DNA of 64,000 nt from Botryllus schlosseri (GCA_051294905.1 CM119384.1:11780001-11844000); one strand, 5' to 3'. Counted from the first letter of the stretch, positions 9,601-58,400 are shown. Program-made: numbers and translations. Notes: generated by a model from the letters alone, not told the origin.

Positions 9601-12600
9601 GGAACTCAGAAAGATTGTGGATTAAGTCTCAATAAACATGTTGTGACGCTAAATCTGTGGTGATCACTATCTATTTACTATCTGGAAGAATGTAAATTGT
9701 AAATCATCCGCAATCGGCTTCAACGGTGAAGGGTATACCTCGGTATACCATCGGTGAAGGGACGTGGCTGGGTAACGTCGTTTCGGAAGTTGTCCGTATG
9801 GGGAGTGCCCGCTGTCACAGTGTCGTCTGGGGAAATTGTCGTATTTGTTTTGGCCGTCGCTGTTTGAGCCAATCGCGGTTTTGGCCGTCGCTGTTGTGGC
9901 CGTCGCTGTTGTGGCCAGTCGGTGTTTTGGCCGTCGCTATTAAGGCCGTCGCTATTTTAGCCGTACACCATTTCGTTGATACCATTTTTGATGATATTTT
10001 TCTATTCTCAATAAATTACGTTATTCGTGCCATCATGCGGCTCCCGACAGAGTTGAGGTTCATAAAATGGCTCCCACAGTGAAAAAGCTTGAGAACCACT
10101 GATTTAACCTGATTTGTGATGCCAGAGTATGTACTGGTAACCATATAGGATTGTATAAGAGTTCAGTTATATCAAATATTTCGATACAATTAAAAGATAT
10201 TCGAAGAGCTTTGAGGTACAGAACTTCAATTTACAATTGAATATTATATTCGTATTGAAATGAACCCGAATATTTTCGGCTGACACTTATCAGGGGTAAT
10301 CGTCAGCAACTAGTAGAGAATCGGAAAGAATATTGTTGATTAAAAGGTAGTGTGATAGGAATAGTGTGTTAATCAAACATCCTTACAGAAAATAATAATA
10401 AAAGAACCTGTGAATGAGAGGCTTGCAGACTGAATGAAAAGTTACATAAGATAACATAAAATAGACAAGCAATGAAAATGAAGTGTCATGTCTCATATAC
10501 CATTCAACTCCAGGTAGCGGATTCTCTTCGGATTTCTCAATCCTGGTGGGTTTCCTTGCCTGCAATATTGAAACGGTGGATTACTTTGAAATCAAGTGCC
10601 GCACGTCTCCATCGACAACCGCAGGAACTGTAGAAGTCACCGCTACCGTCAGGTTAGTCGTGCAGGATTGGAGCTATTTGAATTCGGCAAGTCAAATCAT
10701 TCAATATCACTGAGAAAACATGTTTCTAGTGGCGCAAGTGTCATGTGTACCGGTACGTGCAACTACATGTATGACGCAAATTCGACTCCACAAATATCCA
10801 GCGTGTCTCCATCAACTGTTGTTACATCAGAAAACACAGAACTGACGTTGACAGGAACTTCTTTATCGAGTGACACCACTGTTACTATCGGTGAGTTTAA
10901 TCAGATTCGGATGATATTGTGGTTTCTGATCTCGGCACAAGCAAAGGCATGTCAGTTCTATTGTCATAAAATTGTGATTTGGGCCAATAAATCTTGTATT
11001 ATAACCTTTTTTCTCAACGATATTTGCGAAAATATCGTTGAGACTATTTCCTTGCGTTGTTTGATCACATATATGAATCAACATATGCTACACTTGAGGG
11101 AATGGATCGGATTACTATAATAGACTGGCTGTTCCAGTTATTGGCAGAACGAGAATTTACCCAAGACATGGCTATCGATGTAATAGGAGTCAAATAGTTT
11201 ATATTGCAGCATAAATATTCTTTTCTTCCATGATTAAATGTTCTTTCAATATCATAAAATTGGAAAAATTGGTAACTACAAAAATTGTAAGGTTTTCATG
11301 AGTGAATTTGACCAATTCCTATCCTACGCGAATACTGTCATCGGTGTTATATTAGAATGTAATACTGAAGAGTCAATCATTAAATGAGCCTTTCTAAAGG
11401 GAATTCTCTATCTTTCCATGTGTTCGATTTGCATCAATTTGTTTTTTCCGTCTTGTAGGTTCGGAAAGCTGTGCCGTGTCAACCTCATCTGCCACATCCT
11501 TGACTTGCACCATCGCCCAGATTCCAGCGGGCGTCTATTTTCTACAAGTTCAAGTGCCAGGCGTTGGGAATGCGCAAACTGACCCATCCGCTACTTACAT
11601 AGTCAGGTTAATGAAATGTTTAGATTTAGCAACTTGAGTTGCCAGACATGAAGAGTAACGAAACACTGAAGTACGTCATTGGTATTATGGTTTGTGCTAT
11701 TGTGTGCAGCATGTTTAACATGTATATTGATTAATGTTCAGGCGAATTGAATCAATAATATGCGATTGGACACTGGGAACTGACGATGTCTTGGTGATCA
11801 TTGCTCACCACAAGGCTATAATGCACTTGAATTGCTACTACAACAGCCACCCACTTTCAATCCCGCGTTATAATTTATACAATTGCTGATAACATCTTAT
11901 AGGGTCATTGCACTCTAAATATGATGTATTCTCAAATAGATGATAAAATCGTGAAAAATGTTGGTCACAGTTATTTTCTTCAAAAAACCACCGTAAAGAA
12001 GCTGCACCTAAAACAAAATTCCAACTATTCTCATTGTAAGCTAGTTGTTTGCGTGGATAAATTACCAGTGTGACGAGTCTGCGCGTCTCCGCTGCTTAAC
12101 GTGTTGCGAAATTGCTGACACAAATTATTCACTTGCACTTGCTCAACCCAGTTTTTTAATATGCGAAGTCCATATTCTAGTCTAGCCAAATTTTTTTCCC
12201 GTTCGATCTTTAATTTGAGACCACACCATATTTAAAGTGCATTGCCCCTTCAAGAACTGCGACGTTGATTTAAATATGGTAAAAGACACAGATAGTAACT
12301 AAAGGTATTAATTACAGCTCCCTTATCATCACATCAATGTCTCCAGTCAACGGTAGTAAAGAGGGAGGAACAACGATTGAGTTTACTGGGAATGGATTTA
12401 CATGTGACGATATTGAAGTGAAAGTGGGCAGCAAAGATTGCGTGATAAACACGGATGCTCTCACCAACTTCCAGGTATGGTATTGTGCCGCAACTTTGCA
12501 TGATGTGTAGTGTGCAACATGTAAGTAATCTATTTCATGTCATATTTTAAATGATATTTAAAAAGATGGAATGCGTGACGGTCGCTCAGAATGCCAAATA

Positions 12601-15600
12601 TCGTGATGTGATTGTAACATGCGGGAACGGTCAAACTTATACAGCGTTGTCAGACTTCCGTCATCATGCAGATGTCACTCCTGAAATCCACGATATCTCT
12701 CCGACTGAAGGTACCGTGATCATATGTGTGCAAGACGCAGTCAGGTCTAAGACACAAGTAAATGTTCAAATGTCTTATGCCCTTCTAGATTATGTGCTGT
12801 GCATATTTTACTGTTTGTGATTGCTTCACTAGACATTATTAGAGTCAATGCATGCAATGTATTATACAAATTACTGCCATAGATGTAAAAAATTTACTTG
12901 AAGATATATATGAAATTTGGTAAATATTTATGATAATGTCATTAGGTAGATGCTTCAGATTTCTTCTGCATACATTATAGAAAGTATGCTTTGAAAAGTG
13001 TTCCATGGCGGTGGTACTGATCAAACTAACTTAAATTTGCAGGCGCGGCTGGATCATCGGTCACCATAAATGGCGCTCTCTTCGACCCAAGCAACATGAA
13101 AGTGATGATTGGTGATGTCGAGTGCTCAATCACAGCTGGAGCTGATACTCAGGTATTGAGTTAGCATAAACATATTTGAGGGAACCCAATTTATATCAAT
13201 CCTTGCCAAAGTACGACCTTGCAGACTCATGTCTAAAACTGAATATCATGTAAAACCTAGCCTAACTAAGTTGTGTCCTTTAGCAAATGATGAGCATTTC
13301 CACTTAACATTACTTTCACGGGGTTTCTTATGCGTCACTATTACTGACAGCCATCTGATATGATTAGTTAATGCTCCAGAGATCTTGGGTTAGGTTCCCA
13401 TCAGCGAATCCACCTGCTGGTAAGCAAAATCAGTGCACGTCTCAAGCCAGAGTAAATGGGTAGGGTTGTAACGGGACGAGTATCCGGCATATAACTTCAG
13501 TCAAATCTTTTTGTGAACACTTGATCACCCTCTCCCTCTGGCAAACCCACAATTTTGAGAAGTCAAAAGACTCTCTTTCTATCTGTTTTATGCTTCATTT
13601 TCACTGACTAACAGCCATTTCTTTGCATTATAGATGTTGTGGTGAATACTACCCTTGTTTTACCTTCCTAGATTACCTGTGTACTGCAAGAGCATGCTGG
13701 TGGGGAATATCCGGTTACTGCCAACGTCATACCCTTCGGAAATGCTGAAAGCAACGTTTACTTCAACTACTCATACACTGTCTCAAACACAAGTCCTGAC
13801 CAAGGTCGGTGATGCATCAAAGCATATATCTAGTGTATTGGGTCAATGGTTAATGGAAAAAATGTCATTATGCATTTGTGATTTGGATTCAGCCAGATAG
13901 CAGTAATGCTATATTATCATATATGTAATGTATGTTGAACCTCTCCTGTAGTTCAAAAAAAATTGTCGGTATTGGTTCACAGCATTATCCTATTTCATAG
14001 TTATTTACATATAATATTCCTGTGATTGTAATATTTAGAAGTCCATACGATTCATTCCAATTTGCAGGAAGCTTTGCCGGTGGAAACCTTTTAACCTTGA
14101 CTGGAACAGGATTCAGCGGCAATGCCATGGTGTATATCTGTGATAGCCTTTGTGATCATGGGAATAATACGGAAGGAACCAGTTCCAGTTATAGCGAAAT
14201 TATCTGTAAAGTACCAAGTAAGAGGAATATGCTTTGGGAATTAGATTACCAGGTTACCAAGTGATATGATTAAGATTTTACCGCATATAACCTACTATAC
14301 AAGACACACTGGGTTGACTAAACCAGAGCTTGGTATTTCGAAATTTGAACTTTAGTCTGATTCAATCAGAGTGTAGGAAAATAATGTATAGGTATTTCCA
14401 AACAATGCACAATGTTTAAAAATTATATCTGTTTAGTAAAGATGTTACAATTGCAGTGATGCCTGAAGACACTTCCATCGACAAAGTTTGTGATGTCACA
14501 GTTTCCGTAAATGACCAGTCCATCGTCGTCAGCAACAGTTACACTTATGCTTCCGACCGAACCCCAAAAGTCACCGCCATATCTCCCACAAGAGGTGGGA
14601 CACAAGGTGGTACCACCGTCACTATCACAGGAACTTTGTTTGACTCCGACATGAACAATGTAATCCGTTTCTTTATTTGACTTTGTATTGTTCATTGCAT
14701 GAGATTTGATATTCAGGTTAATGTGGAAATTGGCGGGGTGGTATGCGATTTGGTTTCGGTCACTGTCGCTGAAATACGATGCACAACCAATGCGATAGGA
14801 CACAGCCTCAAAGCAGATGTATTGGTCACAATTGCGGGGAAAGGGAAAGCTTTGACTGATGTTCAGTTCTATTATATAGGTAGGTGCATGATTTTTGGAC
14901 CTATCGTCGAATCTAGTATGAAGTTCTTCATGCGTGACTCTATCATCAAACTTTATTTGTTGCATAATAATTCTAACGGTATTCCTGCCAAGGTATGATA
15001 TGATATGAGTACTCATATGCACAGTTTCGACTGTCTTTTATATCTGATTCTTCTCTAGCTATACATGACTGTGAATGATGATATCAGAGCGACGATTGAA
15101 TTTACTTGCATAACTCAATATTTTTGTATTGTTTTTGTTGTAACAAGTATGACTTCAACATAAATAATTTCTATAATGTACTGATATAAAGAATACATCT
15201 CTTTAAAAAATCTGATGTACATATGAAGAATATTGGAATATAGCACATTTTAGTAATTACGGTTCGATACAGTACCTATATTTCCATTTTATACCATTTG
15301 TAGTCGATTAGGATATCAGTGATTAATCGTGGCTTGGAGTATTTGCCACAAAAGTACATTTGAAAATTATTGTACCAGATGTTTGGTCATCTCAATACAC
15401 TTGGGGCGGCAATCCTCCTCCGCAAGAAGGGGAATTCGTCGTGGTTCCAGCATCGCAGACATTGCTCATCGACGAAGACACGCCAGTCTTGAAAATGATC
15501 CTGATTCAAGGAGGGACTGTCATATTTGACGAGAAGGATATCCATCTGCAGACTGAGAATATCCTCATCACTGACGGCGGAGTGCTTCAGGTAATCCTAG

Positions 15601-18600
15601 AAATATCTAACTTGCCAGGGTTGCTTTTTGTGTCAGGCTTCAAGGGCGCTGCTTCCATTTCATTCATTTTTTCAAATTTCGTAATGCTTTTTAAACTGGA
15701 CTAACATCAACACTGCGTTGACCAGCTACCAGTCATTTTCAGAGGCGGTCAAAGTGGTTATTGTGAGTCACTTGTAAAGGTAATGCAAACATTTCCCGAA
15801 ACTACTTTCTTATTAATGAAGTAAATAGTAGTAAGAAGTAAGTAGAGGAGTATAAGTGGACGTAGTCTAAATCATAACCACTTGGATAAGTATTGCAAGT
15901 CGACAAATCCTCTTTGTTACTGGCCACCTCTGGTCATCTGTGAACTTGTTTCAAATTACTTTAATCCCAGATTGGAACCGAAGACGCTCCCTTCGAGCAC
16001 AAGGCAATTATCACGTTGCACGGACATCTCAGATCTCGCGAGCTTCCTATTTACGGTACTAAAACCATCGGTGTACGCAACGGTACTTTGGATCTTCACG
16101 GAAAGTGAGTTTTCATCGCATATTCGATAACAGATATCATTTCTCCCATTTCTATCAAGGCACGTACCAATCACATGGACCCATCTTTCCCAAACTGCAG
16201 CTGCCGGCACTGACACCATACATCTCAAACATGCTGTGACGTGGAGCATTGGTGATGAGATTGTTCTTGCGACAACCGGTATAGTAATCTGTGTTCTTTA
16301 GCCAGTATGAAAGTGATGGTTTTACCGGTTTACTAGGTGAATTTTGTAACCTGGTTGGCATACTATTACCTTGTATTATACTGGGAAAGAGCTTCTTTCA
16401 TGCTGCAATAGTATCAATATGCCAGAATTATCGCCGAACTTTCAAAATATATGGGTTTTGAACATGTGATGCAGTCTTGTTCAATAATTTTTTATGAGTA
16501 TAACTTGAGGACTGTATGCTTATCGTTTTTAACTATTTTATTGGCGCTTTGATAAGGTACGTAAACCATTCTCACACCTAGTTGTTGAAATCATACTGAT
16601 TTTTCACCTAGTGGTTTATGAAGAAGTTCATTATATAAATTTGCTGCATTTCCGCTAGCAAGTTGCATACGTTCTGGTTATCCCATTTAGTGACGATAAA
16701 TAATTATAATTTGAAAAGAGTAGAAATTAAAGGATTGCACACCTGTTGTGGTTATTAGAAATTTGACTGACTTATTGCCAAGTGGTTTGCATTGAAGTTT
16801 GCTACCAATAATCCCTAGGTTTCTACTGGCTTTAATAAACATATCAAACCTGTACACAAAGTTCAAAATCAACCAATACATATCTCTGATACTGTTTTAT
16901 TTCCAGGATTGCGTCACACACAACGTGAAAACGAGAAGCATGTCATCAAAGCAGTATCTAATGATGGTACACAGCTGACTTTGGAAAGTTCTTTGAGCTA
17001 CACTCATATATCCGTCAGCGAGAGAATATCTGGTAGGATCCATTATAATCATGCAACTTCCGCTCTGAGATGGCAATCTGATTCAGGTATGGACCTGGAA
17101 ACGCATGGTGAAGTCGGGCTGTTGACCAGAAATATTGTGATACGAGGATCTACTCATATGGAATGGAGTAAAGACAAGATACCGGCTTGTCCTGAAGGGT
17201 TTGATACCGGCGAGTTCAAGCAACAGACCTGCTTTCAGGTGGGCTTGTTTTTTCCTGGTTGTTTCCTCAATATAAAGAGAAATGGCTTATTTTTACAATT
17301 GGAATATCAAAGGTTATTATCATTGTTACCAATTCAAGACACCAGCACATTGGTATACAATCAAAAGATACTGAGGTTAAGTGCTTAATCTGGAAGTTAC
17401 TGAACAAAAATTTGATATAATATAAGAACTGATTGCATTAGCTTGAGAATATTTCATCCAGTATTTCTGTGCTTAAAGGGGCACTGCACTCTAAAAATGA
17501 TGTGGTCTAGAATTGAAGGGTAAAACGAAAGAAAAATTTTAACCGCAGCCGTTTTCTTCAGAACGCCACCGTAATTTCCACAGATGCATCACGCTCCAGC
17601 AGTCACGCAGAGATCGAACTTTATATAGTTGTCAGCCTATGTTATAAAGGAAATAGAACAGTGCTCTTCAACCTTTTTCGACGTGGTACACCCTTTTAAC
17701 TCGTACACCCCTGTTCATTAGGGGTCTTCAAAAATGAATTTTTTTCTCAAATCGTACTTGGTACTTGACAAAATTGTTAGGTTACCTAACTTAAGCCTAC
17801 ACACCAAATTTGGTTCAATTCCAACCAGTAGCCGCATTGCTTCGGGAGAAGAAAGTTTCTGTTTATTATATAAAGTAAATAACGAAAAATTTGAAATTTT
17901 TCTGTTCACCCATGAAAGTATTAGGTTGTCTATAAAAACGATGTTCTTCAAATTTGGTTCAATTCCAACCAGTAGAAGTGGAGTTATTGCCGTCAAAGAA
18001 TTTGGATTTGAATAAAATTGTATTTGGTCACAGAGTCTATTCGCAGTCAGTTAAGCCGCCCGCCACGCAAATTGGAATTTATTGCGTGTCAGCCCAAAAA
18101 CAGCATGACATTACGAATGATAATCAACCTAAATGTAACAGTATTCGGGCTGGAGAGTAGGTAAAGTTACTGCTGCAGAAGCGGTAATTCAGATCAGTGA
18201 TGATAGCAGGCGCACCAGCCTACTGTGTATCAGGCCTGCCCCACACCACACACAGTCGATAGTAGCACTTGGGCTGCAAGAGATGTCAGTAACCTCAGAT
18301 CGTATGCCGCTATACACAGCTATTGTCGCTAATTTGCATCACTAATAACAAAATACTGAATTGCAAATGCATGGCGAAATATTGGACATAAAATCGGCAT
18401 TTAAAATAAAAGGGTTTCGATTTCAACATGGAAGCTGTTTCGACCCTGGCTGGCTACGTCACTTCATTTATGTGCATTGCGGTATTTATTAACGTCGGGT
18501 AGGAAGTGCCGATTCAAGAAGTCTGAGCTATCGCGGCGGTTTCCTCAAAAATCACTAAAAGACAAATGACTAGCTGAACACATGTTTGTTAACTGCATAC

Positions 18601-24600: not shown

Positions 24601-27600
24601 AGTGTTTAGAAGGGTATTTTGATTTGTACTTATGATAATATATAAAACCTTAAAAAGCACCAAATATACACATTTTATGGTGTCAAACTTGCATGTAAAC
24701 TCTACATACCAAACATGATAATAAGATACATTTGCCAACAGGACTGCATTCCGCCACCAGACCCCAACTCTCAACCCCCGGCCCGCGTTCGGCCCGACAC
24801 GTTTCAGTTGTGGCACACGGCGTCTCACTGGAAAATTAACGAAAATGATGAATATGCCGCATCTGCTGCAGACGATGGAATCATAACAATTCCTCCTGAT
24901 AATAAAGATATCAGAATAGAACAGGGTATTTTAAGATATGAATTTTTGCAAACATGGACATCATTCATCGTTTTCCATGCAGGTACATGGATGGTTGTGA
25001 AGCAAAGTCTACCGAAAATGAATAAATTGTGGATTGAAGGTGTATTGGAAATTGAATGGAATGACCCTTCTCTTACTGTGGCTTTGAGTGCTACTCATAT
25101 CATGATAATGGTATGATAATGGTTAAACCTATGACAAGTGTTTTTCTTAGCTGAATGACAGCACTTAACTTGATTCATGTTGTTCGTATCATTAATATAT
25201 TCAATCGTAGGGTGGTCGTTTGATTGTCGGATGGGAAGATTCTGCATTCCGGGGGCTAGCAAATATTGTCCTCCGAGGAAATCACAATACTCAGGATGTT
25301 GTTCTTAATGGCGGAGTTGTGCTCGGTTCGAAGGCAATAGGTGAGACTCTTTTTATGACTGTTTTAATCACTGTAACTTTGCTGCATTGAGATTACCAGA
25401 TAACTATGAGTGTGATTTCTACTTGAATTATATTTAAAATGATACCAATTATTATTACTTGAATCAGATACCAAGTTTTTCATGTCAAACTTCACTGGTT
25501 AAGAGAGATGTGATTTAGAAGTTGAAGGATAGGTTTGCCATGTGAAGCTTGAGGATTGTTTCCAAACCTAGTGTCTAAAGAGACCTGCGGCTTTCAACCA
25601 TGTAACCTGTATGTGTGAATACTTTTGAATTTGATACACAGACATTGGTTGTAGTTAGATATTACGAAACTATAATATGGAGATGTGTAATTTAGACTCC
25701 TGTTTGTTTTTTTTTGTTTTCTGATCTCTAACTACTGCTAAATTGTATTTGCACTGAATTTCTAATTGTTTCATGATGCTGTGTGTTGATGTTCTTTTGG
25801 TTACAAACTTTTTATTTTTTATATATTTTTATTAGTTATTAACTGTGATAATTGCTTCTGTCCTGGGTGGCTTGGCTGTGAAGACTTTGTCACATCAAGC
25901 CTCCCGTCTACCTTGCATGGTTGGATGAAAATATAAAGACTCTCTCTATCTCTCTCTAATTTCACTGTGTTGTATCTTTTTTGTGTGCAGTTGGTTTGTA
26001 ATGTGGACGAATAAAGATCTTCTCTCTTTTCTCTCTCTCTTAGAACCATGTGTTCAACTATATATTTGCCAGGTGTGATTGGTGGTCTCGACTTACACGG
26101 AAAGAAGAGGAGTCCCCTGACAACTCATCTCGCAAGTCAGTTAACTGCTGGACAAAGCACAATTACCCTGGAAGATACTCCGTTCGACTGGGAAGAGGGT
26201 AATTGAATGTTCTCTACTGATGTATGCATAAATGTGGCCAGAATGTGCAGTAATCTTCTTTAATGAATTAAAGTTGGAGACCTGATAGTGATATCATGAA
26301 AAGTGATGCCACATTTCCCGGAAATGTTCAAAAGTACCATTCAAAATTGCTTTTGGCATCTTACTTGACCGTGTCATGTTGCATAACATATATTCTACGT
26401 ACATTGCAGGTGACGAAATTGTGATTGCTGGCACTGGCGCTGATCCATGGGAGACGGAAACATTTAAAGTTTCGTCTATCGTCGGAAATGTTGTGACATT
26501 GAACGATTCAGCGAGATTTGACCATATAGGTAAATCAGTCGTCAACTGACGTTAGTTTTAGCCTGTTATGACGTCAAATCTTCATAGGAAAGTAATGGTT
26601 CAAACCCTTACCTTGAACCTTTCCAATTTACGATATAGCTTATTTTTTGTTCCTGAATGATGCTAATTCTTCATGGTAATGACAATATTCTCTTTGTATT
26701 ATCACATTTATTCAATCATTATTTTGGATGCAAATTTTGATTTCTGCAGCTGAAAGTTTCTCCCACAATGTCGCGGGTTCAGGGCCGAGTTCTTATGATA
26801 TCCGTGCCGAGGTTAGCATCCTAACTAGAAATGTCAAGATAATCGGCGAAGAATATGAAGATCTAATATCGGAATCGTTTGGTGCCCGCGTACTCGTGGC
26901 TGGCGTTGGAGATGCAAGGTTTGATACTACTATATCCAGTGACATAAGATAGTAAACCAATACCATTATTTCCCCTTGCAGAGGTTATGCCCGAATTTCG
27001 AATGTTGAATTTTTCCACACCGGTCAAGAAGGATGGATCGATAATTATGACCCGAGATATTCGCTTGCGTTTCTCAACTCAGGTTCGTGCCTCCATCGGT
27101 CAAATTCATACCATGCTAAGCCGCTAAAATTTTCTGCTGTGGCAGAGGAAATAACTTAACGTTATGGCTTATTTGCTAATTTTTAGAAATCATTGCACTA
27201 AACTTTTTATGACATTCAAATTTTATGCTAAGTTTCAATAAGAAGTAAATTATTAGTACACTTATAAGAATGGGATGAAGTATATTTTGTCCTTGATGTT
27301 TTTGTGGCATATACACTGCTCATGATATACATATACACGATTTGTGCATATGCCTCTGGACAAGAAAGGTGCAGAAATAGACTTGGAAAGCCTTGAACCA
27401 CCCCTCCATGCCATTCTTTAAACGATGACCGCTAAGCGGGGGAGCCATGGATACCAGTTTTACTAATCAGGTCTGAGTCTGACCTGGCTGGGGATTGAGC
27501 CCACGACCTACCGACTAAGAAGCCGGACGCTCTACCATTACACTATTTTGCATACTCATTACCCATTAACAGGCCTCTATTTAGCTTGTTGCGTTAAATA

Positions 27601-33600: not shown

Positions 33601-36600
33601 AGCTTGCAATCCAAATTATTCTGACAGGAGTGTACTTGGAACCGAATCCAACAGATCAATATCATCCATCCATCGACAATTCGGCCGGTTCCAACTACTT
33701 CGACAGACAAGCTCAGATCATCCACATCGTCTTACAAGGAGGCAGCGTCGTAGAAATCAGAGAAGCCCCAGTTGTAGTGATCACCTTCAACATGCCGGCC
33801 GTCACTCCCGATGAGTTCTTTGACAACGGGAATCTCATTGGAAATCTGGCTGCCTTCCTGGGAGTAGGGCGGCTCGTACTTTTGCTCCAGGGTCTGCATT
33901 AGATCATATTTTGAATTTTTATTTCGCAGATTCCTGCCAGTAAAATACGCATCGTCGACGTGATCAGAGAAGGCGGTGGTGCTCGTAGAAGGAGGAACAC
34001 AGGCTCTGTAGCAGTGAGTTTAAAATAATATTGAACGTCTGCAGACGGTAGTGACCACAGTGACGATCCGACTTCCCACAAGGCTCCAGATTTATGATGT
34101 TAGATCAGCGGTTCTCGAACTTTTTTTGACACGCCCCCCTTTATGATAGGGGAAAAATTCGCGCGCCCCTTCTCCTCATATCACAAAATGCAATCAGAAT
34201 GCCGGCAATCCCAACGGATAGTTTGATGGCATGGAAGGTTATGAATGTTGATGAGAGAATTCTCAAATATGAAATTCGGACAATACACAGAGTAATACCT
34301 ATGAATCGCAGGTAAATCGTAAAAAGTTTTTCGGTCGACCGCAGCTTCGCCCCCCCCTTCAGATGCTTTCACACACCCCTGTTTGAGAACCGCTGTGTTA
34401 GGTGCTGCTTCAGCTATCGATCAATTTCTGCAAATCTAAATACTATTGCAGGCGTTTATGGAAAATCCGGTAATACACTACACATTGACTTATCAAATAT
34501 GTAGTTTTAAGAACTGCCCGGTACTCAATGCTCATTCTGGACTCTTGGTTTTGATATATGGCGCATAGGTGTCTTTGAATCGTGTATCAACATTGTAATG
34601 AACCCAAATATTTTCGGCTGACACTCTTCAGGGGTAATTGTCAGCAACTAGTAGAGAATTGAGAGGAACATTGCATATCAACAATCGTATCAGATAGGTG
34701 TCTTTGTAGAGCATTTATGTTTCAGTCCCATTTGTTTTAGTTTAAACATTTTCACCGTACTCATCAATCATAGAAACATAACAGAATAGTGTTGATCATT
34801 TGAATGCTGTATTTCTTGACATGAACTGTATTTTAGGCAACTGTGGAAATAGGGGACTCTCCAGAAGAAATAGCCAATGCAACTTCGGTAATTAAGCTTT
34901 TTGTATTTGTGTGTTTTAGGACTTTGACTTGCGTAAGATTAACGGTATGGTCATAGTCATAATATAATAAGCACAGATACATGTTAATCCATTTGATCCA
35001 AGTGATCATTTCCTAGTTTAACTTTGCTCACTGCCTAATCGTTTTGCAGATGTATATTTTAATACATTTTCATGCCAAGTATTACATGTTCTTACAACGT
35101 TTCCAGGCTGGCAACGCAACGTCAGAGAATGAAACTGAGAATTCACTGTCTTACGAGGTACGTTTGTAGCTGTCGCCAGCACAGGGACCAGCTTCTAATT
35201 TAACTAAAGATCAATAGTACCGTAATCTCGGAATATTTTATTTCAGGAACTGCAAAACGTGACAGCCACTATAACGAATGCCCTTCAACAAAATGAGTTG
35301 GGTGACGCGCTCGGCGCGACAGTCAATTCCATGGCAGTGGTGGACGCAAGAGCTGTACCCGCGGTATTGCATGGAATATATAAATTATTTTTTTTGCATG
35401 TTAATACGGGGATATCTATCTGTTCAGAGAAATGCAAACATCACAAACGCTACAGAAACTGATACGGATGAGGTAGATTACTTCGTCCCAGATGCGATTA
35501 CGATCGTGCAGCAGCCAAGCGTCGGAAATCGAGACACTGTGTTCTCTCGAACGTTGAAGGTCATTACATGAGTGTAGTCTGAGCAAGTCAAGTTTCTTCG
35601 AATCCCACTACCTTCTTCCTACAACCCATTTATAGTTCTATTCGTGAACCGTTGACATGTGAACATAAGACATAATAGCATGCGCCAATTGAGCATATGG
35701 TTTAACATCGAGAATTAGAACAATGTCACATATATAACATTGTTATCCCCTTATCCCCTTCTAAATTTTCATTTCTTGTAACATTCCGAGTTCAATTACG
35801 ATACTTATCCCAACCAACCACACCTTAACATCATGTGGAATTAAAACAATACCACATATAGAATTATGTCACCCCCTCATACCATCAAAAATTCGTATTT
35901 TTTGTTAAATGCTAAGTTGAAGCACAATATTTTCCCCCACCTACCACGGCCAAATTTCTAAATCACATTTGTAATTTTTGAATGTAGGGTGTGGTCAGGC
36001 CAGTTGACCATGCCCAGAGTCATATCGAGCACATTAGTCCTGTTTCTAAGTTTCTTTTGTTCATACAGTAATGTGATTTTCTTTTCGATTATACGAATCA
36101 ATATAGTATCTCTTTTTCTCTCTCCAGAAGAATTAATATGCCAAAAATTTTGATTGTGAATTTAAAGAATACTTTCAGAACATCGATGCAGGTCAGCACG
36201 ATTGACTACAATTACAAAAGGCTCACTTATAATTACCACGACATAGGATTTAAGATTATGGCTGAAAATGGAATTTTGTGCCTTACAGGTTGCCGGTGTG
36301 GACGCCAGCGGTAACGAGATTGTTCTTGGGCACAGTTCTGATCCTTGGCAGGGCACAGTTACTATTGTCAGCTCCAGCAATGCAGACGCGTCGATAACAG
36401 AGAATGTTGCTTATTTTAACAATGAAGATGGTCACGCTGAATTTGAAAGTGTGTCACCGTAGCCTCTGGGCAGATTTCGGATAATGTTTTTTCATCCGTG
36501 AATAATATTCACTGAATATCTTTAGATATGACACTCTCGCATGGAGGAGAATACATTCTGAGGATACAAGTAACGTACCCAAGTGCTCAATCTGGACTGA

Positions 36601-43063: not shown

Positions 43064-43069
43064 TTTATT
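43064..43069 (-). promoter_or_regulatory. Candidate polyadenylation signal of gene 2
   Basis: tttatt on +, about 350 nt past the predicted stop at 43417. Position is the only evidence. Confidence 0.3.
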
Positions 43070-43254: not shown

Positions 43255-43416
43255 AAGTGACTTTGCGAGAGCTACTAAGACATTAAAAACTTGATAAACT
43301 AATGAAAATACAGTCACCGTAGTAATAATACCGGATTCACAATTATTTGTTTGGTTGTCGTCAAAAACAAACCTGTGAATCGACAACCCACTGTGCAAGA
43401 TGTCAAGGGTATCTAC

Positions 43417-46400
43417 TCAATTTGTTTCTAATCCAGGGATTTTTAGATCTGGTGTAGGGAGAAGCAAATCCATCTCGGGTTACGTTTTGTCAATAACACA
43501 CAATGAAAAATAATCTAGGTTAAGATAAAAGTAAATAGTGCACCTTCATGGTATGCTTCATTGTGGACATCCATAGTGCTTCTCACAAATTCGGTGTGGC
43601 TCGACGAAGTTCCAATGTCACTCGGAGTTACCTTGTAAGGTTTGCTAGGTACTGAAGCATAACATACAATAGTTGGTATGAGGTTCAGAAATGTTCATTC
43701 TGTCAGAATATTCAATATTAATCGACAGTATTGGTTGGATATGGAGTACACACATTCTCTATTGCAGTGGTTCTCAACCTTTTTGGCTTCGCGGACCCCT
43801 TTTGACCGTCACGGACCCTCGCGGACCCCCTCATGTTTTAGTTCAATTTTAGCTCTATTATGGTGCAACCTTTATCTGTCTTGTACAAATATGAACTGTA
43901 GGTTTGTGGTAAACAGCAAAATTATGATTTTCCTTGAAAATAACCTCATATACCATTTACGTAGAAATTGGTAGACTTTTATTATTTCAAAGCTAATTTT
44001 GCTGCTGTATTTCTTGAAGTACTAGGTCGTGTCTTGAAAATCCACGTCTTCGTTTTGATATGAACCAGGACTGCCGAAAACCATTTCCGCAAAGATAGAT
44101 GGAAGCTAATGCAATATTAACGCATAACGCTTCCGACGTTACTTTTGGTGTGATCGCAACATTTATGGCACCAAACTTAAGAAACATATATTTTATGAAC
44201 ATATCACGTCCAGCATCTAGCGCAGGGACGGCAACATACGGATCGCGAGCCGCAGAGAGTTTCTATTGTCAAAGTGGAATCCTAATCTAAAAGTATGGAC
44301 AAATTTTATGCGCCAAAGAATGGATCCAAGTTTTCCAATCTGAGAAAGACTGTCAGGAAACGACTTGTTATGTTCGGGTTTACGGATATATTTAAGAGCA
44401 AACATTTTCGACCATGAACAATTGAACATTAACAAGACAAGGCTGCATACAAATATAACTGGTGATATGAATTTCAGGGTTGGAGAAAATGCTTTGATAG
44501 CAACGAAACACTCCTTGTTCATAAAAAAACAGCCTTGTCGATAGAGAATCCGCAATAAGAATGTGCCAAATCTGATAGCCGAGCTTTAAGGGCAGGTATA
44601 TCATCATTGTCTGATTTATGACGAGTGTCAGCCGAAAGTACTCGGGTTCATTACAATATGAATATACTATTCAATTGTATATTGAAGTTCTGTACCTTCA
44701 AGAAGCTGTTCAAAAACTGGTTATGTATATCACAGGATAAAATGGATTTCGTGGCAAGGTTTCAGTCCCTGCATTGGAACAAATCAGGGAAATACTTCGG
44801 AAATTTTTATTTCAAACGACTGTTCACTAATTTTATGAGACTGACAACTTCGCACCGAAAAGGTTTCGCAGACATTACGAAGTCATCCTGATTGACGTTA
44901 TCTCCATATTTTTATTTTTTCCACAAACCCCAACAAAACGTCTCTAAACAGCAATATGTTTGTATCAGCAGACTATTGAAAAATTAACAATGAAAATGAT
45001 TTTCCACACTACGATAGTTCATGTCAGACGATTATTATTATGATACGAGTCATGAGGTTTTAGCAGTTGTGGTGCGAAACTGCCTCATGCTTTCTCAAAT
45101 TAAAAAATAAAATAAAAATTAGGTTATCAACCATTTAAAAAATTTAGAGGTCTCGCGGATCCCCTGAAATTGCTTCGCGGACCCCTGGTTGAGAACCGCT
45201 ATCTATTGCATAGGCCCCACCAATGTCACAGCTAACACGCTCAATTGCTTACATGTCTTCGCAGCGTGTGTGGATCATTGGTAATGTAAATCAAAGAGCC
45301 AGAACCAAGAATATTCTTACCAGAGAAGTTAGCCTTGACCACGAAAAATGCAATGAGTCCAATCACAAGCAGTCCTCCAATAATACTGAAGACAATTATG
45401 AAAACATTGTTGTCATTAACCTCAATCACTCCAGCAGCAGAAACCTGAAAAGAATTTGAATGTTTTCAAAATAGGTAGCCCTACATCATTGAGTTATTTA
45501 TCTTGAAAACCGTTGATGATTTTGTTTTTATACTAATTTCCCTTGGAATAGCAACACTTAATGCACACTACGTCATATAAGCTACAGTTCGCTTGAAATG
45601 ATATGTATCAACAAGGATCTATGTTTTGTAACTTTCATCACCATTATTATGGAACATTACACATGCACACGAGAACAACATACTTCCAGGGTCGCAACCA
45701 ATTCACAAGGCTCCGAGTCACAAGTCAATCTCACTTTTATAGTTTTAACTCGAGTCATATCAAGTCATTTTCAATTCACCACCGAGTCCAAGAGATTGTG
45801 TTGACTGCCCATTTTCAGGTTAAAGTCTTGTTAAACCCACTTTTTATAACTCTGTTTGGTGATATCGAATGGTTCGCATTTATAATATACTAATTTTCCT
45901 CACTTTTAGCAGTTTCTGGTCGCATTTTCAAGTACCAGTACCAATTGACGAAATCCCAATAGTGGGGTTACTTTGCTATTCTTCGAAATTACAATGAAAT
46001 GTCGGTCTTGGCCGTCTGAGTCTCGAGTTATATGACTTGGTTCGAGTCATGTGTAATGACTCGTCCAAGTCTAGTCAATACACAGATTGACTCCCGTCGA
46101 ATCGAGTCATTTCCGTATTTTGAGAAAATGACTCGAGTCATTACAGCCCTGCATGCATCACACTTATTGTAGAAGAGGTATCGCAGCTGTGAGTGCAATA
46201 TATTCTCACGGAAATAGAGCTAGTTTCCACAGTCAATCCGCTTTGAGAACTTGGATAGGTGACTTGAATTCTCAGAGTATATTGGCCGGCGTGTGACAAG
46301 GTCATACCTGAAAATAAATTCCACACACTAGTAATCCCACACTGAGAAAACACGTGAATGCAATCCTACTTGAAAATTCAGCATGGTTGTCTTCGTTGTT

Positions 46401-52400: not shown

Positions 52401-55400
52401 GTGCTTGGCAAATCGATACATTATTCGCGTATTTATCCACCTATACAAGGAATAAATGGTGTTTAATGTAAACTTCAAGTTTAAAGCATAGACATCAAAA
52501 ACAGTATTTAATGAATGTATTAACCTAATGCGATTTAATAGCTGTTTAAGTTAATCAAACATATGTGGACGATCAAAGGTGTCAACAAGTTTTTTGAACT
52601 CCTGCTGCATGTCGGTTGTAGAAACCCTTAGTAAAGACTGCACGAGAACATCAGTTATATCGGAACGCGACCATGTCTCTTAAATGTTAATGGTCCAAAA
52701 TGTTTGCTCGCAAATGTATGTAGACCCAAACTGAATGAGTAGTTTCATGACCATGACCATCTTTCGGTTGCAAACTCTCTGCGGGCTGCTCAAAATCCCG
52801 GATCCAACCCGCGGGCCGTATGTTGCCCGCCCCTGGCATCGGGGATCAGAGTACTCATTGTCGGTACTCAAGTCGGAGTAGAGATGTGAATTTCTACTAA
52901 ATTACAAGTGGATATAGCGATTCTTGGGAACTGATTACACTACTTCGCACAAAGTTTCTGACAAGCACGCAAATCTACTAAGCCTGATACACTAGAAGTT
53001 CTAAGTATGTCAGTACTCAATGTTGTTTTCGTTTCTATGACGTCATAATTGGATGTATGCAATGTAGGTATATGCAAGTTTTTGAAATTCTCTATATGCT
53101 GACGATTGCCCCTGAAGAGTGTCAGCTCGGAAAGCTTCGGGTTTTAATATATTTACGATATGAATATATTATTAAAAGGCATATCAAGTCTGATAACAAC
53201 ACAAACGACTCAGACTCAGTGAATGGTGTGCCAAAAATATGAAAATAAGGTAACCAGCCTGGTACATTTTCATCGCGAATCAACAGCCTGCTCAAACTTA
53301 CTAGTTAATGATGTATCACAATTGAACAAATTTACCTGAGGGATAACGGATCCACCACTACCACCGATTACAGATCCGTCGTTATCCACGAAAAGCGCTT
53401 TTTTCATTCCATCGCATTCCATATCAACACAGTCAGATGGGTTGACTTTACTGAGGTAGGAAAATGAAGAGTAAGACAGTGACCACATTAAATATCCAGT
53501 CGGAAACATCTCTTCACCGCAAAGTTACACTAATGTTATTTTGACTTAAAATGTCTTATGTAACCAAGCAAAATTTGATCGCTTTGCAAGAGTATTGAGT
53601 AAGTGACCTCATACAATTGTGCAGTAGCATTACAATATTAGACAATTTGGTGATATTTCTTTTCATTACTTGAAATTGAATTGAGGATATTGAAGTCAAA
53701 TCAACATGTGTTGAAAGAATAAAAGATGACACTGTAAAGTAGAAGATAACACATTACATTGAACTAAACGTAGCATTGGGAGAAACGCAAACTGACAAGA
53801 AAAACAGAAGATATAATATAAAATCATTATTTTAATCCATCAGTCATGGTCATCTTACTTCGGTTTTGTATTGATTCATTACAAACACCTGCATTGAAGC
53901 CAAGAATTCCTAGCGATAGTATTTTGTACATAGATGAACACAAGCCAGAGCCTCCATTTGAATAATAACATTAACACTCACCCAACAGAGGGCCGGTGGA
54001 AAAACAAACGGGTGTCTTCTGGCGAGTTCAAAAATTCTATATTCTCCCCGTATATCGGATGCAAGAAGTCTTCAATCTGATTATTAGTGACGATGACCGT
54101 GTGGCCCGACGAGCATGACGTGTCGCCAAAATTCACAAAAGCGACTCCTGCAGATGCAAAGGACAGATGTTTGCTGGAACGTTATGCCAGAACAATAAAA
54201 TCGTGACCATTTATGTCTGTGCGCCCTCCGATAGCAGGATATGACTTGGATGACAGGAAGGGTTTGCTTGGCGCTTGGTTTTGTGCGGAGATGAACGCCG
54301 GCCATAACACGCCCGTTCGCACAACCCCACTTGCTCCTGCCCGGCCTGATGCTCTCGCAAATAAGGAATTGGAGACATAGTCAGTCCCCGAGGACAAAGT
54401 AGGACAGTAATCTGGTATATATAGATATTGAATTACTGAGGTGCGTGACCTGTGATGCGACATATTTAGTGTTCCGTACCGGCTCGACTCACTGCCACAA
54501 TGGTAGAACTTTCAATTCGGACAGTCTTGGCTTGGAAGGAATGCGATGTCGCTGCGGGCCTGGAGATATATCATCATTAGACAAAATGCATGATCAAAAC
54601 AACTAGGCAAGCTAATACTTTAACAGTACACTTTAAAACAGAGGGATGAAACTCCTACAATATTTCATAGCATATTTCTTAAAAACAACCACGGCTGATA
54701 TACCTTAAAATTTGTACTTGGATTTCAAGAGCTTCTTGGAGGTACAGAACTTCAATATACAATTAAATAGTATATTCATATTGAAATGAACCCAAATATT
54801 TTCGGCTGACACTCGACAGGGGTAATCGTCAGCAACTATGAGAGAATTGGAAAGAACATTGTATATCAACAATCGTAGGAGTTCGTGTACCACCTGGGAA
54901 TAATGCATTGAACGCTCTCTCATTCAAAATTTCATGCTGGTGACGTCATATTTTGTGATATGTTGATATGCAATGTTTTTTCCAATTCTCTACTAGTTAC
55001 TGACGATTACCTCTGACGAGGGTCAGCCGAAAATATTCGGGATCATTTCAATATGAATATACTATTCAATTTTCAATTGTCAATATCAATTCACTATGAC
55101 ATCGCTATTTAATATTCGTGACATCATTGCCTTATGAATAAACCATGGATTTCAGTGCCACAGTGTGTAGATAAACCTAGCTGTTTTGAGAAAATAATCG
55201 GTAGCAAGCAAATTAGAAATACTTCAGTATATCGAAAACGATGATGTACAAAACCGGCTCTCAAGAATTACACAGGTTTCAGCACTAGTATCCAGCTAGA
55301 TTTAAAGTCCCCACCTTCAGAGGATTAAATCAGATGCGAATTATCTAGCTTGCGTTACAAAGTTAATAAGGAAACTTTTGAATCACCCATTAATAATTGC

Positions 55401-58400
55401 CGCCACTCCAAACCCACTGTCTGTCACCAAGACATTGGATATGATAACGCTCCCCGGGCCTTGATAATATATACCGTCATCAAAAGCAGCATGGATTCGG
55501 AATTTGCTGATACGGGTGCATGGTGAATAACCTGTAAAGTAATATACACAGTAAAACATTTTTTCGATGACTGTTCCATAATTCAATGAGCCCTACGTGA
55601 CGGTGGTACATCTTCTGCGACATAGGTATTTCGTAACGTGAGCAAGAATCGAAATATAATTTGCGTTAGGATGTGTTAAGCTGTACTATCCGCCATAGAT
55701 TTGGTTTTGGACAAAGAATTAGAATTGGAAATATCACTAAATTAGGAATCAAAACTTTCCAAATCGGATTGTGACTTGAATGGACATAGAATCTCATTTG
55801 ATTTTGATGTGATTAATTAGCAAACATAAACTTTAGTAAAAACATTATAGGCATTGAAATTATCAATATATTTGCAAGTGAAACCCCACTCAGTCAACAA
55901 AGTACAATATTTAGATGATTTGCTGAGATGCAATCAAATCCACATTGTAAATACTAAGAAACCGTATATCCGGATATGATTGATTGCAACCTAACATAGG
56001 CAAAATATACAGAGGGAATGGGAGAGAAGGGTACATAGATTACTGTGATGTTCCGACCTTGATCAATAATTTCTGAATCACTGGTATATCAGATAAGCAG
56101 AACTATACATTGTGTAAAAATATCACTACCGTCTTACCGTCATTATTCAACCAGACACCTTGCAGAGTCGCGCGTGCTGTGTTCCAGCCCCATTCAATGT
56201 TATCGCTTGAGTCAGCAGATGGCCTAAGCAACATATTTACTTTATAGTATGTCGCTCTGACATGTGTATCTTGTTCTCACCCGCAGTCAGTGCCACGGAT
56301 ACGATACCCCGCACGTTCAGATCCAACAACAACGTTCTCCTGCATAATCGGCCGGGTCGCCAAAGTAACCTATCAGAGAATTATTGACACATATTGCCTT
56401 TTGTATCTTAAATCAATCTGACTGACTATGACTAACTAACCAACTGCCAAGAAAGAGTTCAACGCAGTAACCAGACATCAAATGATACATGAAGATGAGA
56501 TGAACATATGTGACCTGATTTTACCGATAACATCACAAAATGCAGACTGGCATATAAAATGACACAAAGTTGCAGTAGACAGTAAACCTCAATTGCCGCC
56601 TTCCATCCGGTAAGGTCTTTTTCCACTCTGTCAAGATATACGGTTCTTGTGCGCACTAGCATTGCCAGGTTATCTTCCACTCTGGTTTTTAGAACACAGT
56701 CAATCGACCGTACAAAAACAAGCCAAAAAACTAATTACGTGATATCCGATCCTTCCACACGAATCGCCGGACCCACAGTGTGGTGAATCACATTATGGCT
56801 CACGCTGAAATTGTTAGCACCAAAGACCCCGATGGCTGTGTTGAAACCGTTGTGGAATGTGCTGTTGTGCACATAGGAAGGTTTGAGTGGGTCAGAGTCA
56901 CCTGAAATGCATTATTGTTTACAGTGTTAATAAATCAGAGACATAGAGTGTGATTTGAGACACAAACCTGAATCCAGGAAGGCAAGGGAATATCTCGGAT
57001 CAAAGTTGTCAATCCACCCTTCCTGACCGGTGTGGTAGAACTCAACATCGGAAATTCTGGCGTATCCCCTGTAAACGACTCCGTGTTGTAAAATTCAAGG
57101 TAATCGCCAGGGTTGTAGTGACTCGACTTGTAGTCGAGTTATTGTGCATGACTCGAACCAAGTCCTATGACTAGGTAGGCCAAGACAGACATTTAATTGT
57201 AACTTCGAAGAATAGTAAAGTTACCACATTATTGGTATTTCGTCTATCAGTCCTGATACTTGGAAAATAGTGCCAGAAACTGTTAAGACAAAGGAAAATT
57301 ACTATATTATGAATCCGAGCCATTCTATATCACTCGAACAGAGTTTAAAAAGTGCGTTGAACCTGATTGAACTGAAAATTGAAGAGTGAATTCGGACTTG
57401 GACTCGGACTCGAGTCAAAACACTATGCCTCGGACTCGACTCTCTACTAGCCCACTTGGGCTCGGACTTGACTCTGTGGTGAGTTGAAAATGACTCGACT
57501 TGACTCGAGTCAAAACTATAAAAGTGAGATTGACTTGTGACTCGAAACCTTGTGACTCGGTTACAATCCTGGGAATCACCGAGAACATTGAAATGCACCA
57601 GAAATGCCACAGTGCTCGCATAAATTCTGATCTAAAGACACTGTTATTAGTACGGCCTATATCAGCCATATAATTAATGCTTAAAGAGCGTCTTGGAGGT
57701 ACAGAACTTCAATCTACAATAGAATAGTATATTCATATTGAAATGAACCCTAATATTTTCGGCTGACACTCGTCAGGGGTAATCATCAGCAACTAGTAGA
57801 GAATTGGAAAGAACATTGGAGTCGACTTTTATCAAAATACATCAGCCCAAGCTTTGTCAACAAAAGGAGTTCGTGTACCATCTTGAAATAGTACAATTGA
57901 ACGCTCTCTTGTGTGAGATCTCATTTCATGCTGGTGACGTAATATTTCGAGATACTATTGTTGATATAAAAGGTTCTTTCCAATTCTATACTAGTTGCTG
58001 ACAATAACCCCTGACGAGGGTCAGCCGAAAATATTCGGGTTCATTCCAATATGAATTTACCATTCATTTGTATATTCTGATGTTCTCTTAAACAAAAACA
58101 TTAACGGCACTAAACAGGCGCATGGGCCTATCACTATGTTTATAATAGTTAATATTTTTCGTGTGGTATCATAGTTTCAACGGATTTACCTTCAAAGAAT
58201 ATAATATGGGGAATCAAGTCCCATACTTATAAAATCACAATTTCTAAATAATTCTTATGGACTCAAATGCAAATCATTACACCTAACATAGACTCTACCT
58301 GGCTCCACCGGCTCCCGTTATCAGAACACGGGCTCCAAATGACTGCTGGATCAATTGATTGTAGTCTTCTCCAATGATTTTCACATTTCTCGTCAAAATG

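What the first reader, a model, noticed from the sequence alone, without database searches (positions are those of the whole stretch)
10205..58091. Dispersed repeat family carrying a minimal dimer-type hammerhead ribozyme with covarying palindromic stem III
Eight arms at six loci (10205, 34578, 44617, 53075, 54724 x2, 57681 x2) share stem I (ccc/ggg), CUGANGA, a 1-2 bp stem II, GAAA, a 6-nt palindrome and UH. The palindrome is AATATT in six arms, AGTACT at 44637-44642 and AAGCTT at 53132-53137. Each variant needs two substitutions and each stays self-complementary, which is the covariation expected if stem III forms between two ribozyme copies. Minimal type I hammerheads with palindromic stem III are established for Penelope-like element pLTRs and newt satellite 2. 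No RT or GIY-YIG ORF is in this window, so this looks like a non-autonomous ribozyme-bearing family at high local density.
Basis: partly seen in the sequence, partly recalled or inferred. Interest (0 to 1): 0.82.

Follow-up and report, generated by a model that had tools for sequence, protein, structure and literature searches.

The report
Penelope retroelement tails carrying hammerhead motif
The repeats are cut-off tail ends of a Penelope-type jumping gene in a sea-squirt-like genome, each holding a worn copy of the small self-cutting hammerhead RNA motif these elements are already known to carry, so the finding is real but mostly ordinary.

Summary
The repeat family and the motif are real. 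Only 4 of the 8 arms still meet a full minimal-hammerhead descriptor. The other four have G8A, A6U, a 5' truncation inside the core, or an A13G/indel.

The arms are not a separate non-autonomous family. They are 5'-truncated insertions of an autonomous Penelope-like element (PLE). Arm R58 keeps the last 26 codons of the PLE ORF. Two public contigs carry that ORF (C-terminal GIY-YIG region, relatives with RT) followed by the intact family consensus. The copies show PLE hallmarks: variable 5' ends, two 3'-end classes 31-38 nt apart (the PLE "tail"), and head-to-head pairs.

Across four related PLE families the hammerhead fold covaries: stem I, the C3-G8 pair, the centre of the stem III palindrome, and a 6-bp pseudoknot between a 5' box and loop II. 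The energetically favoured two-hairpin fold shows no covariation.

RNA reads show no pile of ends at the predicted cut. Window copies decay neutrally.

PLE dimer-type hammerheads and loop II pseudoknots are both published. Earlier agents of this scan reached the same reading on other windows of this genome.

The parts
57816..58091 (+). Arm R58, a 5'-truncated PLE copy. It holds the last 26 codons of the PLE ORF (57816-57896, frame broken by a 1-nt insertion) and the 3' UTR. Then: box GCUGAC 57997-58002, stem I CCC 58008-58010, core CUGACGA 58011-58017, G10.1 58018, loop II GUCAGC 58020-58025, C11.1 58026, GAA 58027-58029, palindrome 58030-58035, H17 C58036, GGG 58037-58039. The ATG of the PLE ORF start is at 58051-58053, followed by a diverged tail.
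57681..57818 (-). Arm L57, a 5'-truncated copy head-to-head with R58. Box GCUGAU 57785-57790, hammerhead motif 57748-57779, H17 = A at 57751 (family consensus C). It has the full 3' tail, ending at about 57684.
54878..55069 (+). Arm R55. It holds the last 10 codons and stop of the PLE ORF (54879-54911) and the UTR. Hammerhead motif 55010-55041, with stem I CCU/GGG and box ACUGAC (one mismatch). It has the tail-less 3' end.
54724..54877 (-). Arm L54, head-to-head with R55. Motif 54791-54822 with a dead core CUGUCGA (A6U). It has the full tail.
10205..10335 (-). Solo 5'-truncated copy s10. Motif 10265-10296 with a dead core CUGAUAA (G8A). It has the full tail. A weak 8-bp TSD candidate lies at 10189/10339.
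34578..34693 (-). Solo copy s34. Intact motif 34603-34634 (CUGAAGA, H17 = U). It has the tail-less 3' end and is flanked by a 13-bp target-site duplication at 34565-34577 and 34694-34706.
44619..44716 (+). Solo copy s44, 5'-truncated inside the hammerhead core (no C3, no stem I 5' strand). Palindrome AGUACU 44637-44642. It has the full tail.
53086..53173 (+). Solo copy s53 of a divergent subfamily (77% identical). Palindrome AAGCUU 53132-53137, as in related PLE families. The core reads GGA (A13G or a register shift) and there is one extra base in loop II. It has the tail-less end.

Best explanation
The eight arms come from six insertion events of one Penelope-like retrotransposon (PLE) family in a tunicate-type genome: four solo 5'-truncated copies and two head-to-head pairs. 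All lie in introns of a TIG/G8-domain host gene.

Each arm is the 3' end of the element. It comprises, to varying extent, the end of the RT/GIY-YIG ORF, about 100 nt of UTR and a minimal type I hammerhead. After the hammerhead come the first 5 codons (tail-less) or 19 codons (with tail) of the next ORF unit, because the PLE reverse transcriptase starts copying inside the downstream unit of a tandem transcript.

The hammerhead has these parts: a 3-bp stem I, the standard core, and a 1-bp stem II (G10.1-C11.1). The 6-nt loop of stem II pairs with a box 4-6 nt upstream of stem I, forming a pseudoknot. There is no stem III hairpin, only a 6-nt palindrome that can pair solely with a second copy.

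Inferred, not shown: in active master elements two copies (tandem units or two RNAs in an RNP) pair through the palindrome and cut after H17. That site is 3-17 nt upstream of the ORF's AUG. Cutting would release the 5' end of unit-length or translatable RNA, while the 3' copy must stay uncut to serve as template.

The copies in this window are dead-on-arrival relics decaying neutrally. Half of them no longer have a viable core.
For: PLE identity:
- The 60-aa stop-free stretch 57819-57998 hits the C-terminus of P0121 at 96% identity.
- tblastn places the last 26 residues of P0121 and its relatives at 57816-57896.
- P0121's contig L004 has ORF, UTR and the exact family consensus with an intact motif. 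L005 has the same with the full tail.
- Homologues carry RT motifs plus PF00078, PF26215 and PF01541 GIY-YIG.

PLE hallmarks:
- Variable 5' ends with a shared 3' end.
- Two 3'-end classes, at 57684/57691 and at 57722/57728, which is 31-38 nt apart. These appear as DNA contigs and reads and in window copies. They match the 30-40 bp PLE tail (PMC11167929, PMC8557442).
- Head-to-head pairs. Relatives have them flanked by 11-12 bp TSDs, with the tail on one arm only, as drawn for PLEs in PMC8557442.
- A 13-bp TSD around s34.
- A tandem array with a hammerhead every 2672 nt in L007.
- The ORF starts just 3' of the motif.

Hammerhead fold:
- The descriptor is met 4 times against 0.12 expected.
- On 16 sequences of 4 families, 97.4% of cells pair and 9 of 14 pairs change on both sides. 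No shuffle of 500 reaches this, and slid controls give 0-1 such pairs.
- The two-hairpin MFE fold has no compensatory pair.
- The box/loop duplex is -8.1 kcal/mol, against -4.7 for the core-sequestering hairpin.
Against: - No cleavage is shown. RNA reads from a bulk run and a single-cell run give no pile of molecule ends at the predicted cut, and the bulk run covers both strands equally, which looks like passive read-through. Standard libraries capture 5'-OH and cyclic-phosphate ends poorly, and the same negative was published for the Anolis PLE (PMC11167929).
- Rfam hammerhead models do not score.
- The AAUAUU self-duplex of this family is predicted at only -0.2 kcal/mol. The monomer MFE is two hairpins that bury the core.
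- One related family has CCGAUGA (U4C), so not every lineage keeps a canonical core.
- The covariation rests on about four lineages, and I chose the structure after seeing the sequences.
- Window copies show no significant extra conservation of the motif: 6.7% versus 9.0% divergence, p=0.28.
- I did not recover a full-length master copy from this genome.
Confidence: 0.85

Rival explanations
1. This is a separate non-autonomous, retrozyme- or SINE-like family. Short ribozyme-bearing units, including the 350-410 bp inverted composite, would be transcribed and mobilised in trans by PLE enzymes, possibly through circular RNA.
For: Copy number is very high: 55,044 DNA contigs were laid on 601 nt, with summed depth up to about 3 million against 12-15 on the flanks. 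No long ORF is present in the window. A 2026 preprint derives animal retrozymes from PLE pLTRs (10.64898/2026.07.22.740005).
Against: - The arms run without a break into the PLE ORF end.
- The 5' ends are graded, as in truncated autonomous copies.
- The two pairs have different internal junctions and no flank homology, so the composite was not itself copied.
- There are no tandem direct repeats.
- No backward joint (the sign of a circular RNA) was among the listed joints; only the best supported of about 240 were shown.
Confidence: 0.08
2. The conserved structure is real but is not a working ribozyme. It would serve as a protein-binding, RT-priming or translation-start structure of the PLE RNA, and the hammerhead core would be kept for its fold rather than for cutting.
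For: - Published PLE hammerheads cut poorly in vitro (PMC4209133).
- In Anolis, core mutants do not affect insertion in vitro, and cleavage needs the protein (PMC11167929).
- No read ends pile at the cut.
- One relative has U4C.
- The motif lies 3-17 nt before the AUG.
Against: - C3-G8 is replaced by U3-A8 in one family. That swap preserves a catalytic-core pair, and the equivalent C3G/G8C swap partly rescues cutting (PMC11167929).
- The remaining core nucleotides are invariant across families A, B and D.
- PLE-associated variants were reported to cleave as dimers (Lunse et al., cited in PMC6765202).
Confidence: 0.1
3. This is a foldback or MITE-type DNA transposon whose terminal inverted repeats happen to contain a hammerhead-like string.
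For: Two loci are 350-410 bp units with about 130-bp inverted arms.
Against: - Four loci are single arms with different 5' truncation points.
- TSD lengths vary: 13 bp here, 11-12 bp in relatives.
- The arms continue into a reverse-transcriptase/GIY-YIG ORF.
- The motif covaries as a hammerhead.
Confidence: 0.01

Closest known systems
Minimal hammerheads of metazoan Penelope-like elements (Cervera & de la Pena 2014, PMC4209133; Lunse, Weinberg & Breaker, RNA Biol, cited in PMC6765202)
   Same: It is a type I motif in the PLE terminal repeat, with no stem III hairpin and a palindromic 15.x-16.x stretch that implies a dimer. It keeps G10.1-C11.1 with an extra base after it. It occurs at massive copy number, with families that covary within and between genomes.
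   Different: The 2014 descriptor has a hairpin helix II, often of 6 bp. Here the hairpin is 1 bp, and the 6 bp are made with a box upstream of stem I. From memory, not checked here: the Lunse paper notes contacts between bases preceding stem I and loop II. Tunicates are not named in the text searches I ran.
Poseidon PLE of Anolis carolinensis (PAc), PMC11167929
   Same: The hammerhead overlaps or adjoins the ORF start. Reverse transcription starts inside the ORF's 5' part, giving two 3'-end classes 30-40 nt apart (the tail). Both DNA strands are cut and extended. No RNA-seq ends are seen at the ribozyme cut.
   Different: In PAc the ORF starts in stem II and RT starts 111-118 nt into the ORF. 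Here the AUG is 3-17 nt after the cut, and insertions end 5 or 19 codons into the ORF.
Hammerheads stabilised by a stem I / loop II pseudoknot (Perreault et al. 2011, PMC3088659)
   Same: There is a roughly 6-bp Watson-Crick pseudoknot tying the stem I side to the stem II side. [quoted passage not shown]
   Different: That tested example is a bacterial/metagenomic type II monomer with a normal stem III. Here the motif is type I, retroelement-borne and dimer-type.
Animal non-LTR retrozymes, newt satellite 2, and Schistosoma Sm-alpha (PMC7229834; bioRxiv 10.64898/2026.07.22.740005)
   Same: Type I hammerheads with a weak, palindromic helix III in abundant animal repeats, argued to derive from PLE pLTRs.
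   Different: Those are tandem direct repeats of 170-400 nt that yield circular RNAs, with canonical helices I and II. Here the copies are dispersed, 5'-truncated and often inverted, and they are contiguous with the PLE ORF.
Non-circularly permuted hammerheads (type SGC/CSG), PMC10085705
   Same: The core helices include pseudoknots.
   Different: There the order of the CUGANGA, GAAA and cleavage-site blocks is rearranged. Here the order is the classic type I order.

Membership tests
Hammerhead ribozyme | Conserved core: C3 U4 G5 A6 N7 G8 A9, G12 A13 A14, the A15.1-U16.1 pair, and H17 not G | tested here: met
   Met in the family consensus (L004, L005) and in 4 of 8 window arms. The other four are mutated or truncated.
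Hammerhead ribozyme | Three helices around the core, supported by covariation | tested here: met
   Stem I has 2 of 3 pairs compensatory. Helix II is G10.1-C11.1 plus a 6-bp pseudoknot with 5 of 6 pairs compensatory. Helix III exists only as a 6-nt palindrome, with the centre pair UA<->GC and AGUACU in s44. This rests on about 4 lineages.
Hammerhead ribozyme | Match to the curated Rfam hammerhead models | tested here: not met
   No hit at gathering score on the window, nor at E<=10 on 57650-58120. This is expected for motifs lacking stem II and III hairpins.
Hammerhead ribozyme | Site-specific self-cleavage after H17 | tested here: inconclusive
   No pile of read ends at 58036/58037 or 57751/57750 in two RNA runs. 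Library chemistry and dead copies limit the test. A biochemical assay is not possible with these tools.
Penelope-like element (EN+ PLE) | Single ORF with a reverse transcriptase followed by a C-terminal GIY-YIG endonuclease, contiguous with the repeat | tested here: met
   57816-57896 matches the last 26 aa of P0121. L004 and L005 join that ORF to the repeat. Homologues carry RT motifs, PF00078 and PF01541. P0121 itself scores GIY-YIG only at E=0.031.
Penelope-like element (EN+ PLE) | Insertion anatomy: strong 5' truncation, partial tandems or inverted 5'-truncated partner, optional 30-40 bp tail at one end | tested here: met
   Graded 5' ends. Two 3'-end classes 31-38 nt apart. Head-to-head pairs in the window and in L008-L012, with TSDs around the pair. 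A tandem array in L007.
Animal retrozyme (non-LTR retrozyme) | Tandem direct repeats of a short unit, each with a hammerhead, giving circular RNA | tested here: not met
   No tandem direct copies in the window. No backward joint appears among the joints listed for the RNA runs; only the best supported were shown.
MITE / foldback DNA transposon | Fixed-length TSD, complete terminal inverted repeats in every copy, no reverse-transcription signature | tested here: not met
   Four copies are single arms with different 5' ends. TSDs are 11-13 bp and variable. The arms continue into the PLE ORF.

The most novel reading that the evidence does not exclude
This tunicate PLE lineage may use an unusual build of the dimer-type hammerhead. 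Helix II would be a single G-C pair extended by a 6-bp pseudoknot with a box 4-6 nt upstream of stem I. A single base would cross the groove, as in a classic H-type pseudoknot. One family carries a natural U3-A8 swap of the catalytic C3-G8 pair. The cut site lies 3-17 nt before the ORF's AUG. On this reading the box competes with a core-sequestering hairpin and, together with the need for a partner copy, would act as a switch. The switch would let the 5' copy be cut (mRNA/unit release, perhaps cap-independent translation as in PMC13725137) while the 3' copy stays whole as RT template.
Probability: 0.35. Interest if true: 0.45.

Novelty: new member of a known kind. Interest (0 to 1): 0.3.

Why it matters
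It settles what a very abundant repeat of this genome is: dead tails of a Penelope-like retrotransposon. That is useful for masking and annotation, and for not over-reading similar notes from other windows.

It adds a chordate-invertebrate (tunicate-type) example in which the PLE "tail", internal RT start and both-strand priming described biochemically for an Anolis element can be read directly from insertion anatomy.

The comparative set of four families gives natural compensatory mutants: box/loop II, stem I, U3-A8 and the palindrome centre. A ribozyme laboratory could test these directly. None of this overturns current knowledge.

Tried and rejected
- Rfam, at gathering score on the window and at E<=10 on the best pair: no hammerhead hit.
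- My first gapped pattern was mis-specified and found nothing.
- A metagenome-wide scan for a degenerate form of the motif returned only three chance hits in GC-rich bacterial contigs.
- An exact look-up of the hAT ORF found nothing because of the start codon. The homology search on it served only to place the organism near tunicates.
- Pfam on 14 window ORFs found no RT or GIY-YIG, only hAT, TIG, G8 and one sub-threshold DUF2283 hit.
- P0122 from the representative search is a spurious repeat match.
- L008's downstream region has no recognisable motif.
- TSDs for the two window pairs, s44 and s53 could not be established.
- I considered a segmental-duplication origin for the two pairs and an amplified inverted composite. 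I rejected both because there is no flank homology and the internal junctions differ.
- I rejected the upstream CUGACGA box as the true core. It has no stem I partner and no G10.1-C11.1.
- The Lunse et al. paper is not held, so what I say of its content is from memory.
Full report
**Observation**

A self-BLAST of 57601-58200 finds the family at six loci:
- four single arms (10209-10335, 34576-34691, 44619-44713, 53086-53173);
- two units made of two inverted arms each (54724-55079 and 57681-58091).

The 33-nt motif recurs six times with at most three mismatches, against none in shuffles. The variant palindromes are exactly at 44637-44642 (AGTACT) and 53132-53137 (AAGCTT).

Only four arms pass a complete minimal-hammerhead descriptor, where chance gives 0.12 per window. 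The other four are defective:
- s10 has G8A.
- L54 has A6U.
- s44 is truncated inside the core and lacks C3 and the CCC strand.
- s53 reads GGAAAGCUU (A13G or a one-base shift) with an extra base in loop II.

Rfam's hammerhead models give nothing, even at E<=10 on the best locus.

**What the arms are**

The sense strand of arm R58 is open for 60 codons up to a TGA that lies in the box just before the motif. Searching that peptide against 1.84 billion representatives gave P0121, a 236-aa protein whose C-terminus matches at 96%.

The contig encoding P0121 (L004) shows the ORF, about 100 nt of UTR, and then the family consensus with an intact motif. A second contig (L005, protein 82% identical) shows the same with a longer 3' end.

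Homologues of P0121 carry the RT motifs, PF00078, PF26215 and PF01541. That is a reverse transcriptase followed by a C-terminal GIY-YIG endonuclease, the architecture of EN+ Penelope-like elements. P0121 alone reaches GIY-YIG only at E=0.031.

In the window, tblastn finds one coding remnant: 57816-57896, the last 26 residues. Arm R55 keeps the last 10 codons and the stop. The nearest relatives of the window's hAT transposase are tunicate proteins. This agrees with earlier notes of this scan that the genome is of sea-squirt type.

**Insertion anatomy**

The copies share a 3' end and differ in their 5' ends.

I laid DNA contigs and RNA reads of the same organism on 57600-58200. The family is extremely abundant: 55,044 DNA contigs were laid, and summed word depth reaches about 3 million against 12-15 on the unique flanks. 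The tool warns that this is not a copy number.

Loose ends cluster at two 3' positions, 57684/57691 and 57722/57728, which are 31-38 nt apart.
- Window copies L57, L54, s10 and s44 have the long end.
- s34, R55 and s53 have the short one.

This is the optional 30-40 bp 'tail' described as peculiar to PLEs. It has been explained by two internal RT start sites (PMC11167929, PMC8557442).

The two inverted units have different internal junctions and no flank homology, so they are independent insertions.

In related elements fetched from public assemblies, head-to-head ORF pairs are the rule (L008-L012).
- These pairs are flanked by 11-12 bp target duplications, clear in L009 and L011 and only about 6 bp in L012.
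- In L009, L011 and L012 one arm carries the tail and the other does not.

This matches the published scheme of PLE insertions (PMC8557442) and the finding that a PLE protein cuts and extends both DNA strands (PMC11167929). L007 holds a tandem array with a hammerhead every 2672 nt. Solo copy s34 has a 13-bp TSD.

The PLE ORF starts just 3' of the motif.
- In L007 the ATG is 5 nt after stem I, and the product begins MKPLLLAIFKFCT....
- The window family's tail encodes MNILFNCILKFCTSKKLFK.

Insertions therefore end 5 or 19 codons into the next unit's ORF.

**The RNA fold**

Four families share one layout:
- box (6 nt), then a linker (4-6 nt), then stem I (3 bp);
- the core, then G10.1, one base, loop (6 nt) and C11.1;
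- GAA, the palindrome (6 nt), H, and the other strand of stem I.

The box/loop pairs are:

| Families | Box | Loop |
|---|---|---|
| A | GCUGAC | GUCAGC |
| B, C | UCUGAC | GUCAGA |
| D | UGACGC | GCGUCA |

Stem I is CCC/GGG, CUC/GAG or CCA/UGG. Family B has UUGACAA, which is U3-A8 in place of C3-G8. The palindrome is AAUAUU or AAGCUU.

Counting pairs on the 16-sequence alignment gave these results:
- 97.4% of cells are paired.
- 9 of 14 pairs change on both sides.
- No shuffle of 500 reaches this.
- Slid controls give 21-37% paired and 0-1 compensatory pairs.

The thermodynamically preferred fold of the monomer is two hairpins that bury the core. It shows no compensatory pair and is no better than shuffles.

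In s44, the AGUACU change would also break the rival hairpin.

Caveats:
- There are about four independent lineages.
- I drew the structure after seeing the sequences.
- Family C has U4C.

**Function**

Nothing here shows cleavage.
- Reads of a bulk and a single-cell RNA run give no pile of ends at the predicted cut.
- The bulk run covers both strands equally, as expected for passive intronic read-through of many dead copies.
- The Anolis study reports the same negative (PMC11167929).
- The AAUAUU duplex is predicted at -0.2 kcal/mol, against -4.3 for AAGCUU. The box/loop helix (-8.1) outcompetes the core-sequestering hairpin (-4.7).
- Window copies are no more conserved in the motif than beside it: 6.7% versus 9.0%, p=0.28.

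So selection acts on master elements, not on these relics.

My inference is that in masters two copies pair through the palindrome and cut just upstream of the AUG. This would free the 5' end of the unit RNA. The 3' copy must stay uncut, because insertions contain it whole. Related ribozyme-before-ORF arrangements have been tied to processing and translation start (PMC13725137).

**Comparison and novelty**

All of the following are published:
- minimal, dimer-type hammerheads in PLE repeats (PMC4209133; Lunse et al., cited in PMC6765202);
- the PLE tail and internal RT start (PMC11167929).

The permuted hammerheads of PMC10085705 are a different thing.

Earlier agents of this scan reached the same reading on other windows of this genome. 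Here I tested it independently.

The finding is a new member of a known kind. The one modestly unusual trait is a helix II made almost wholly by the pseudoknot.

Noticed in passing
window 7535-9526 (+): There is an intact 663-aa hAT-type transposase ORF with PF05699 and FAM200/ZBED5-like domains. Its closest relatives are 64-70% identical proteins of Ciona savignyi, Clavelina lepadiformis and unnamed ENA assemblies. It may be a young or domesticated hAT copy.
   Followed up: partly
window 3154-3582, 10596-11120, 24715-25116 (+): These ORF pieces carry IPT/TIG and G8 domains on the + strand. They look like exons of a fibrocystin/PKHD1-like host gene. All hammerhead-bearing copies would then lie in its introns, in both orientations.
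   Followed up: partly
window 57752 (L57 arm), RNA run X24: In 113 reads, similarity to the arm stops at 57752, one base from the predicted cut (H17 = 57751, which differs from the consensus). The sequence beyond is unrelated and non-consensus. This could mark copies whose 3' end is the hammerhead cleavage site. It was not visible in the DNA rows shown and could not be re-examined.
   Followed up: no
L007:10808-10839, 13480-13511, 16152-16183; L009:8374-8405(-), 10718-10749: A related PLE family carries UUGACAA instead of CUGANGA. This is a natural U3-A8 replacement of the catalytic C3-G8 pair, in young, identical tandem copies.
   Followed up: partly
L011:8132-8163(-), 11365-11396(+): Another related family has CCGAUGA (U4C, in the uridine turn) with a compensated stem I CUC/GAG. 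It may be an inactive or non-canonical core.
   Followed up: no
L007:10844-13368: The tandem PLE unit (2672 nt) has its ORF called in two pieces (246 aa and 564 aa) separated by 90 nt. This could be a retained intron, a known PLE oddity, or a frameshift.
   Followed up: no
window tail 57684-57736(-); L005:1165-1221; L006:2428-2495; L007:10844-10900: The last 30 nt or so of the element (…UUCUGUACC…AAGAAGCUCUUUAAA) and the peptide it encodes (ILKFCT) are conserved between PLE families whose C-terminal ORF regions are only about 50% identical. This fits the region being both ORF start and RT/EN recognition site.
   Followed up: partly
window 58026, 58048, 58050, 57955, 57997 (run X22): In the single-cell RNA run a set of linked variants (for example 58026 C>T in 88% of one orientation, against 4% in DNA) points to one or a few highly expressed copies elsewhere in the genome.
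   Followed up: no
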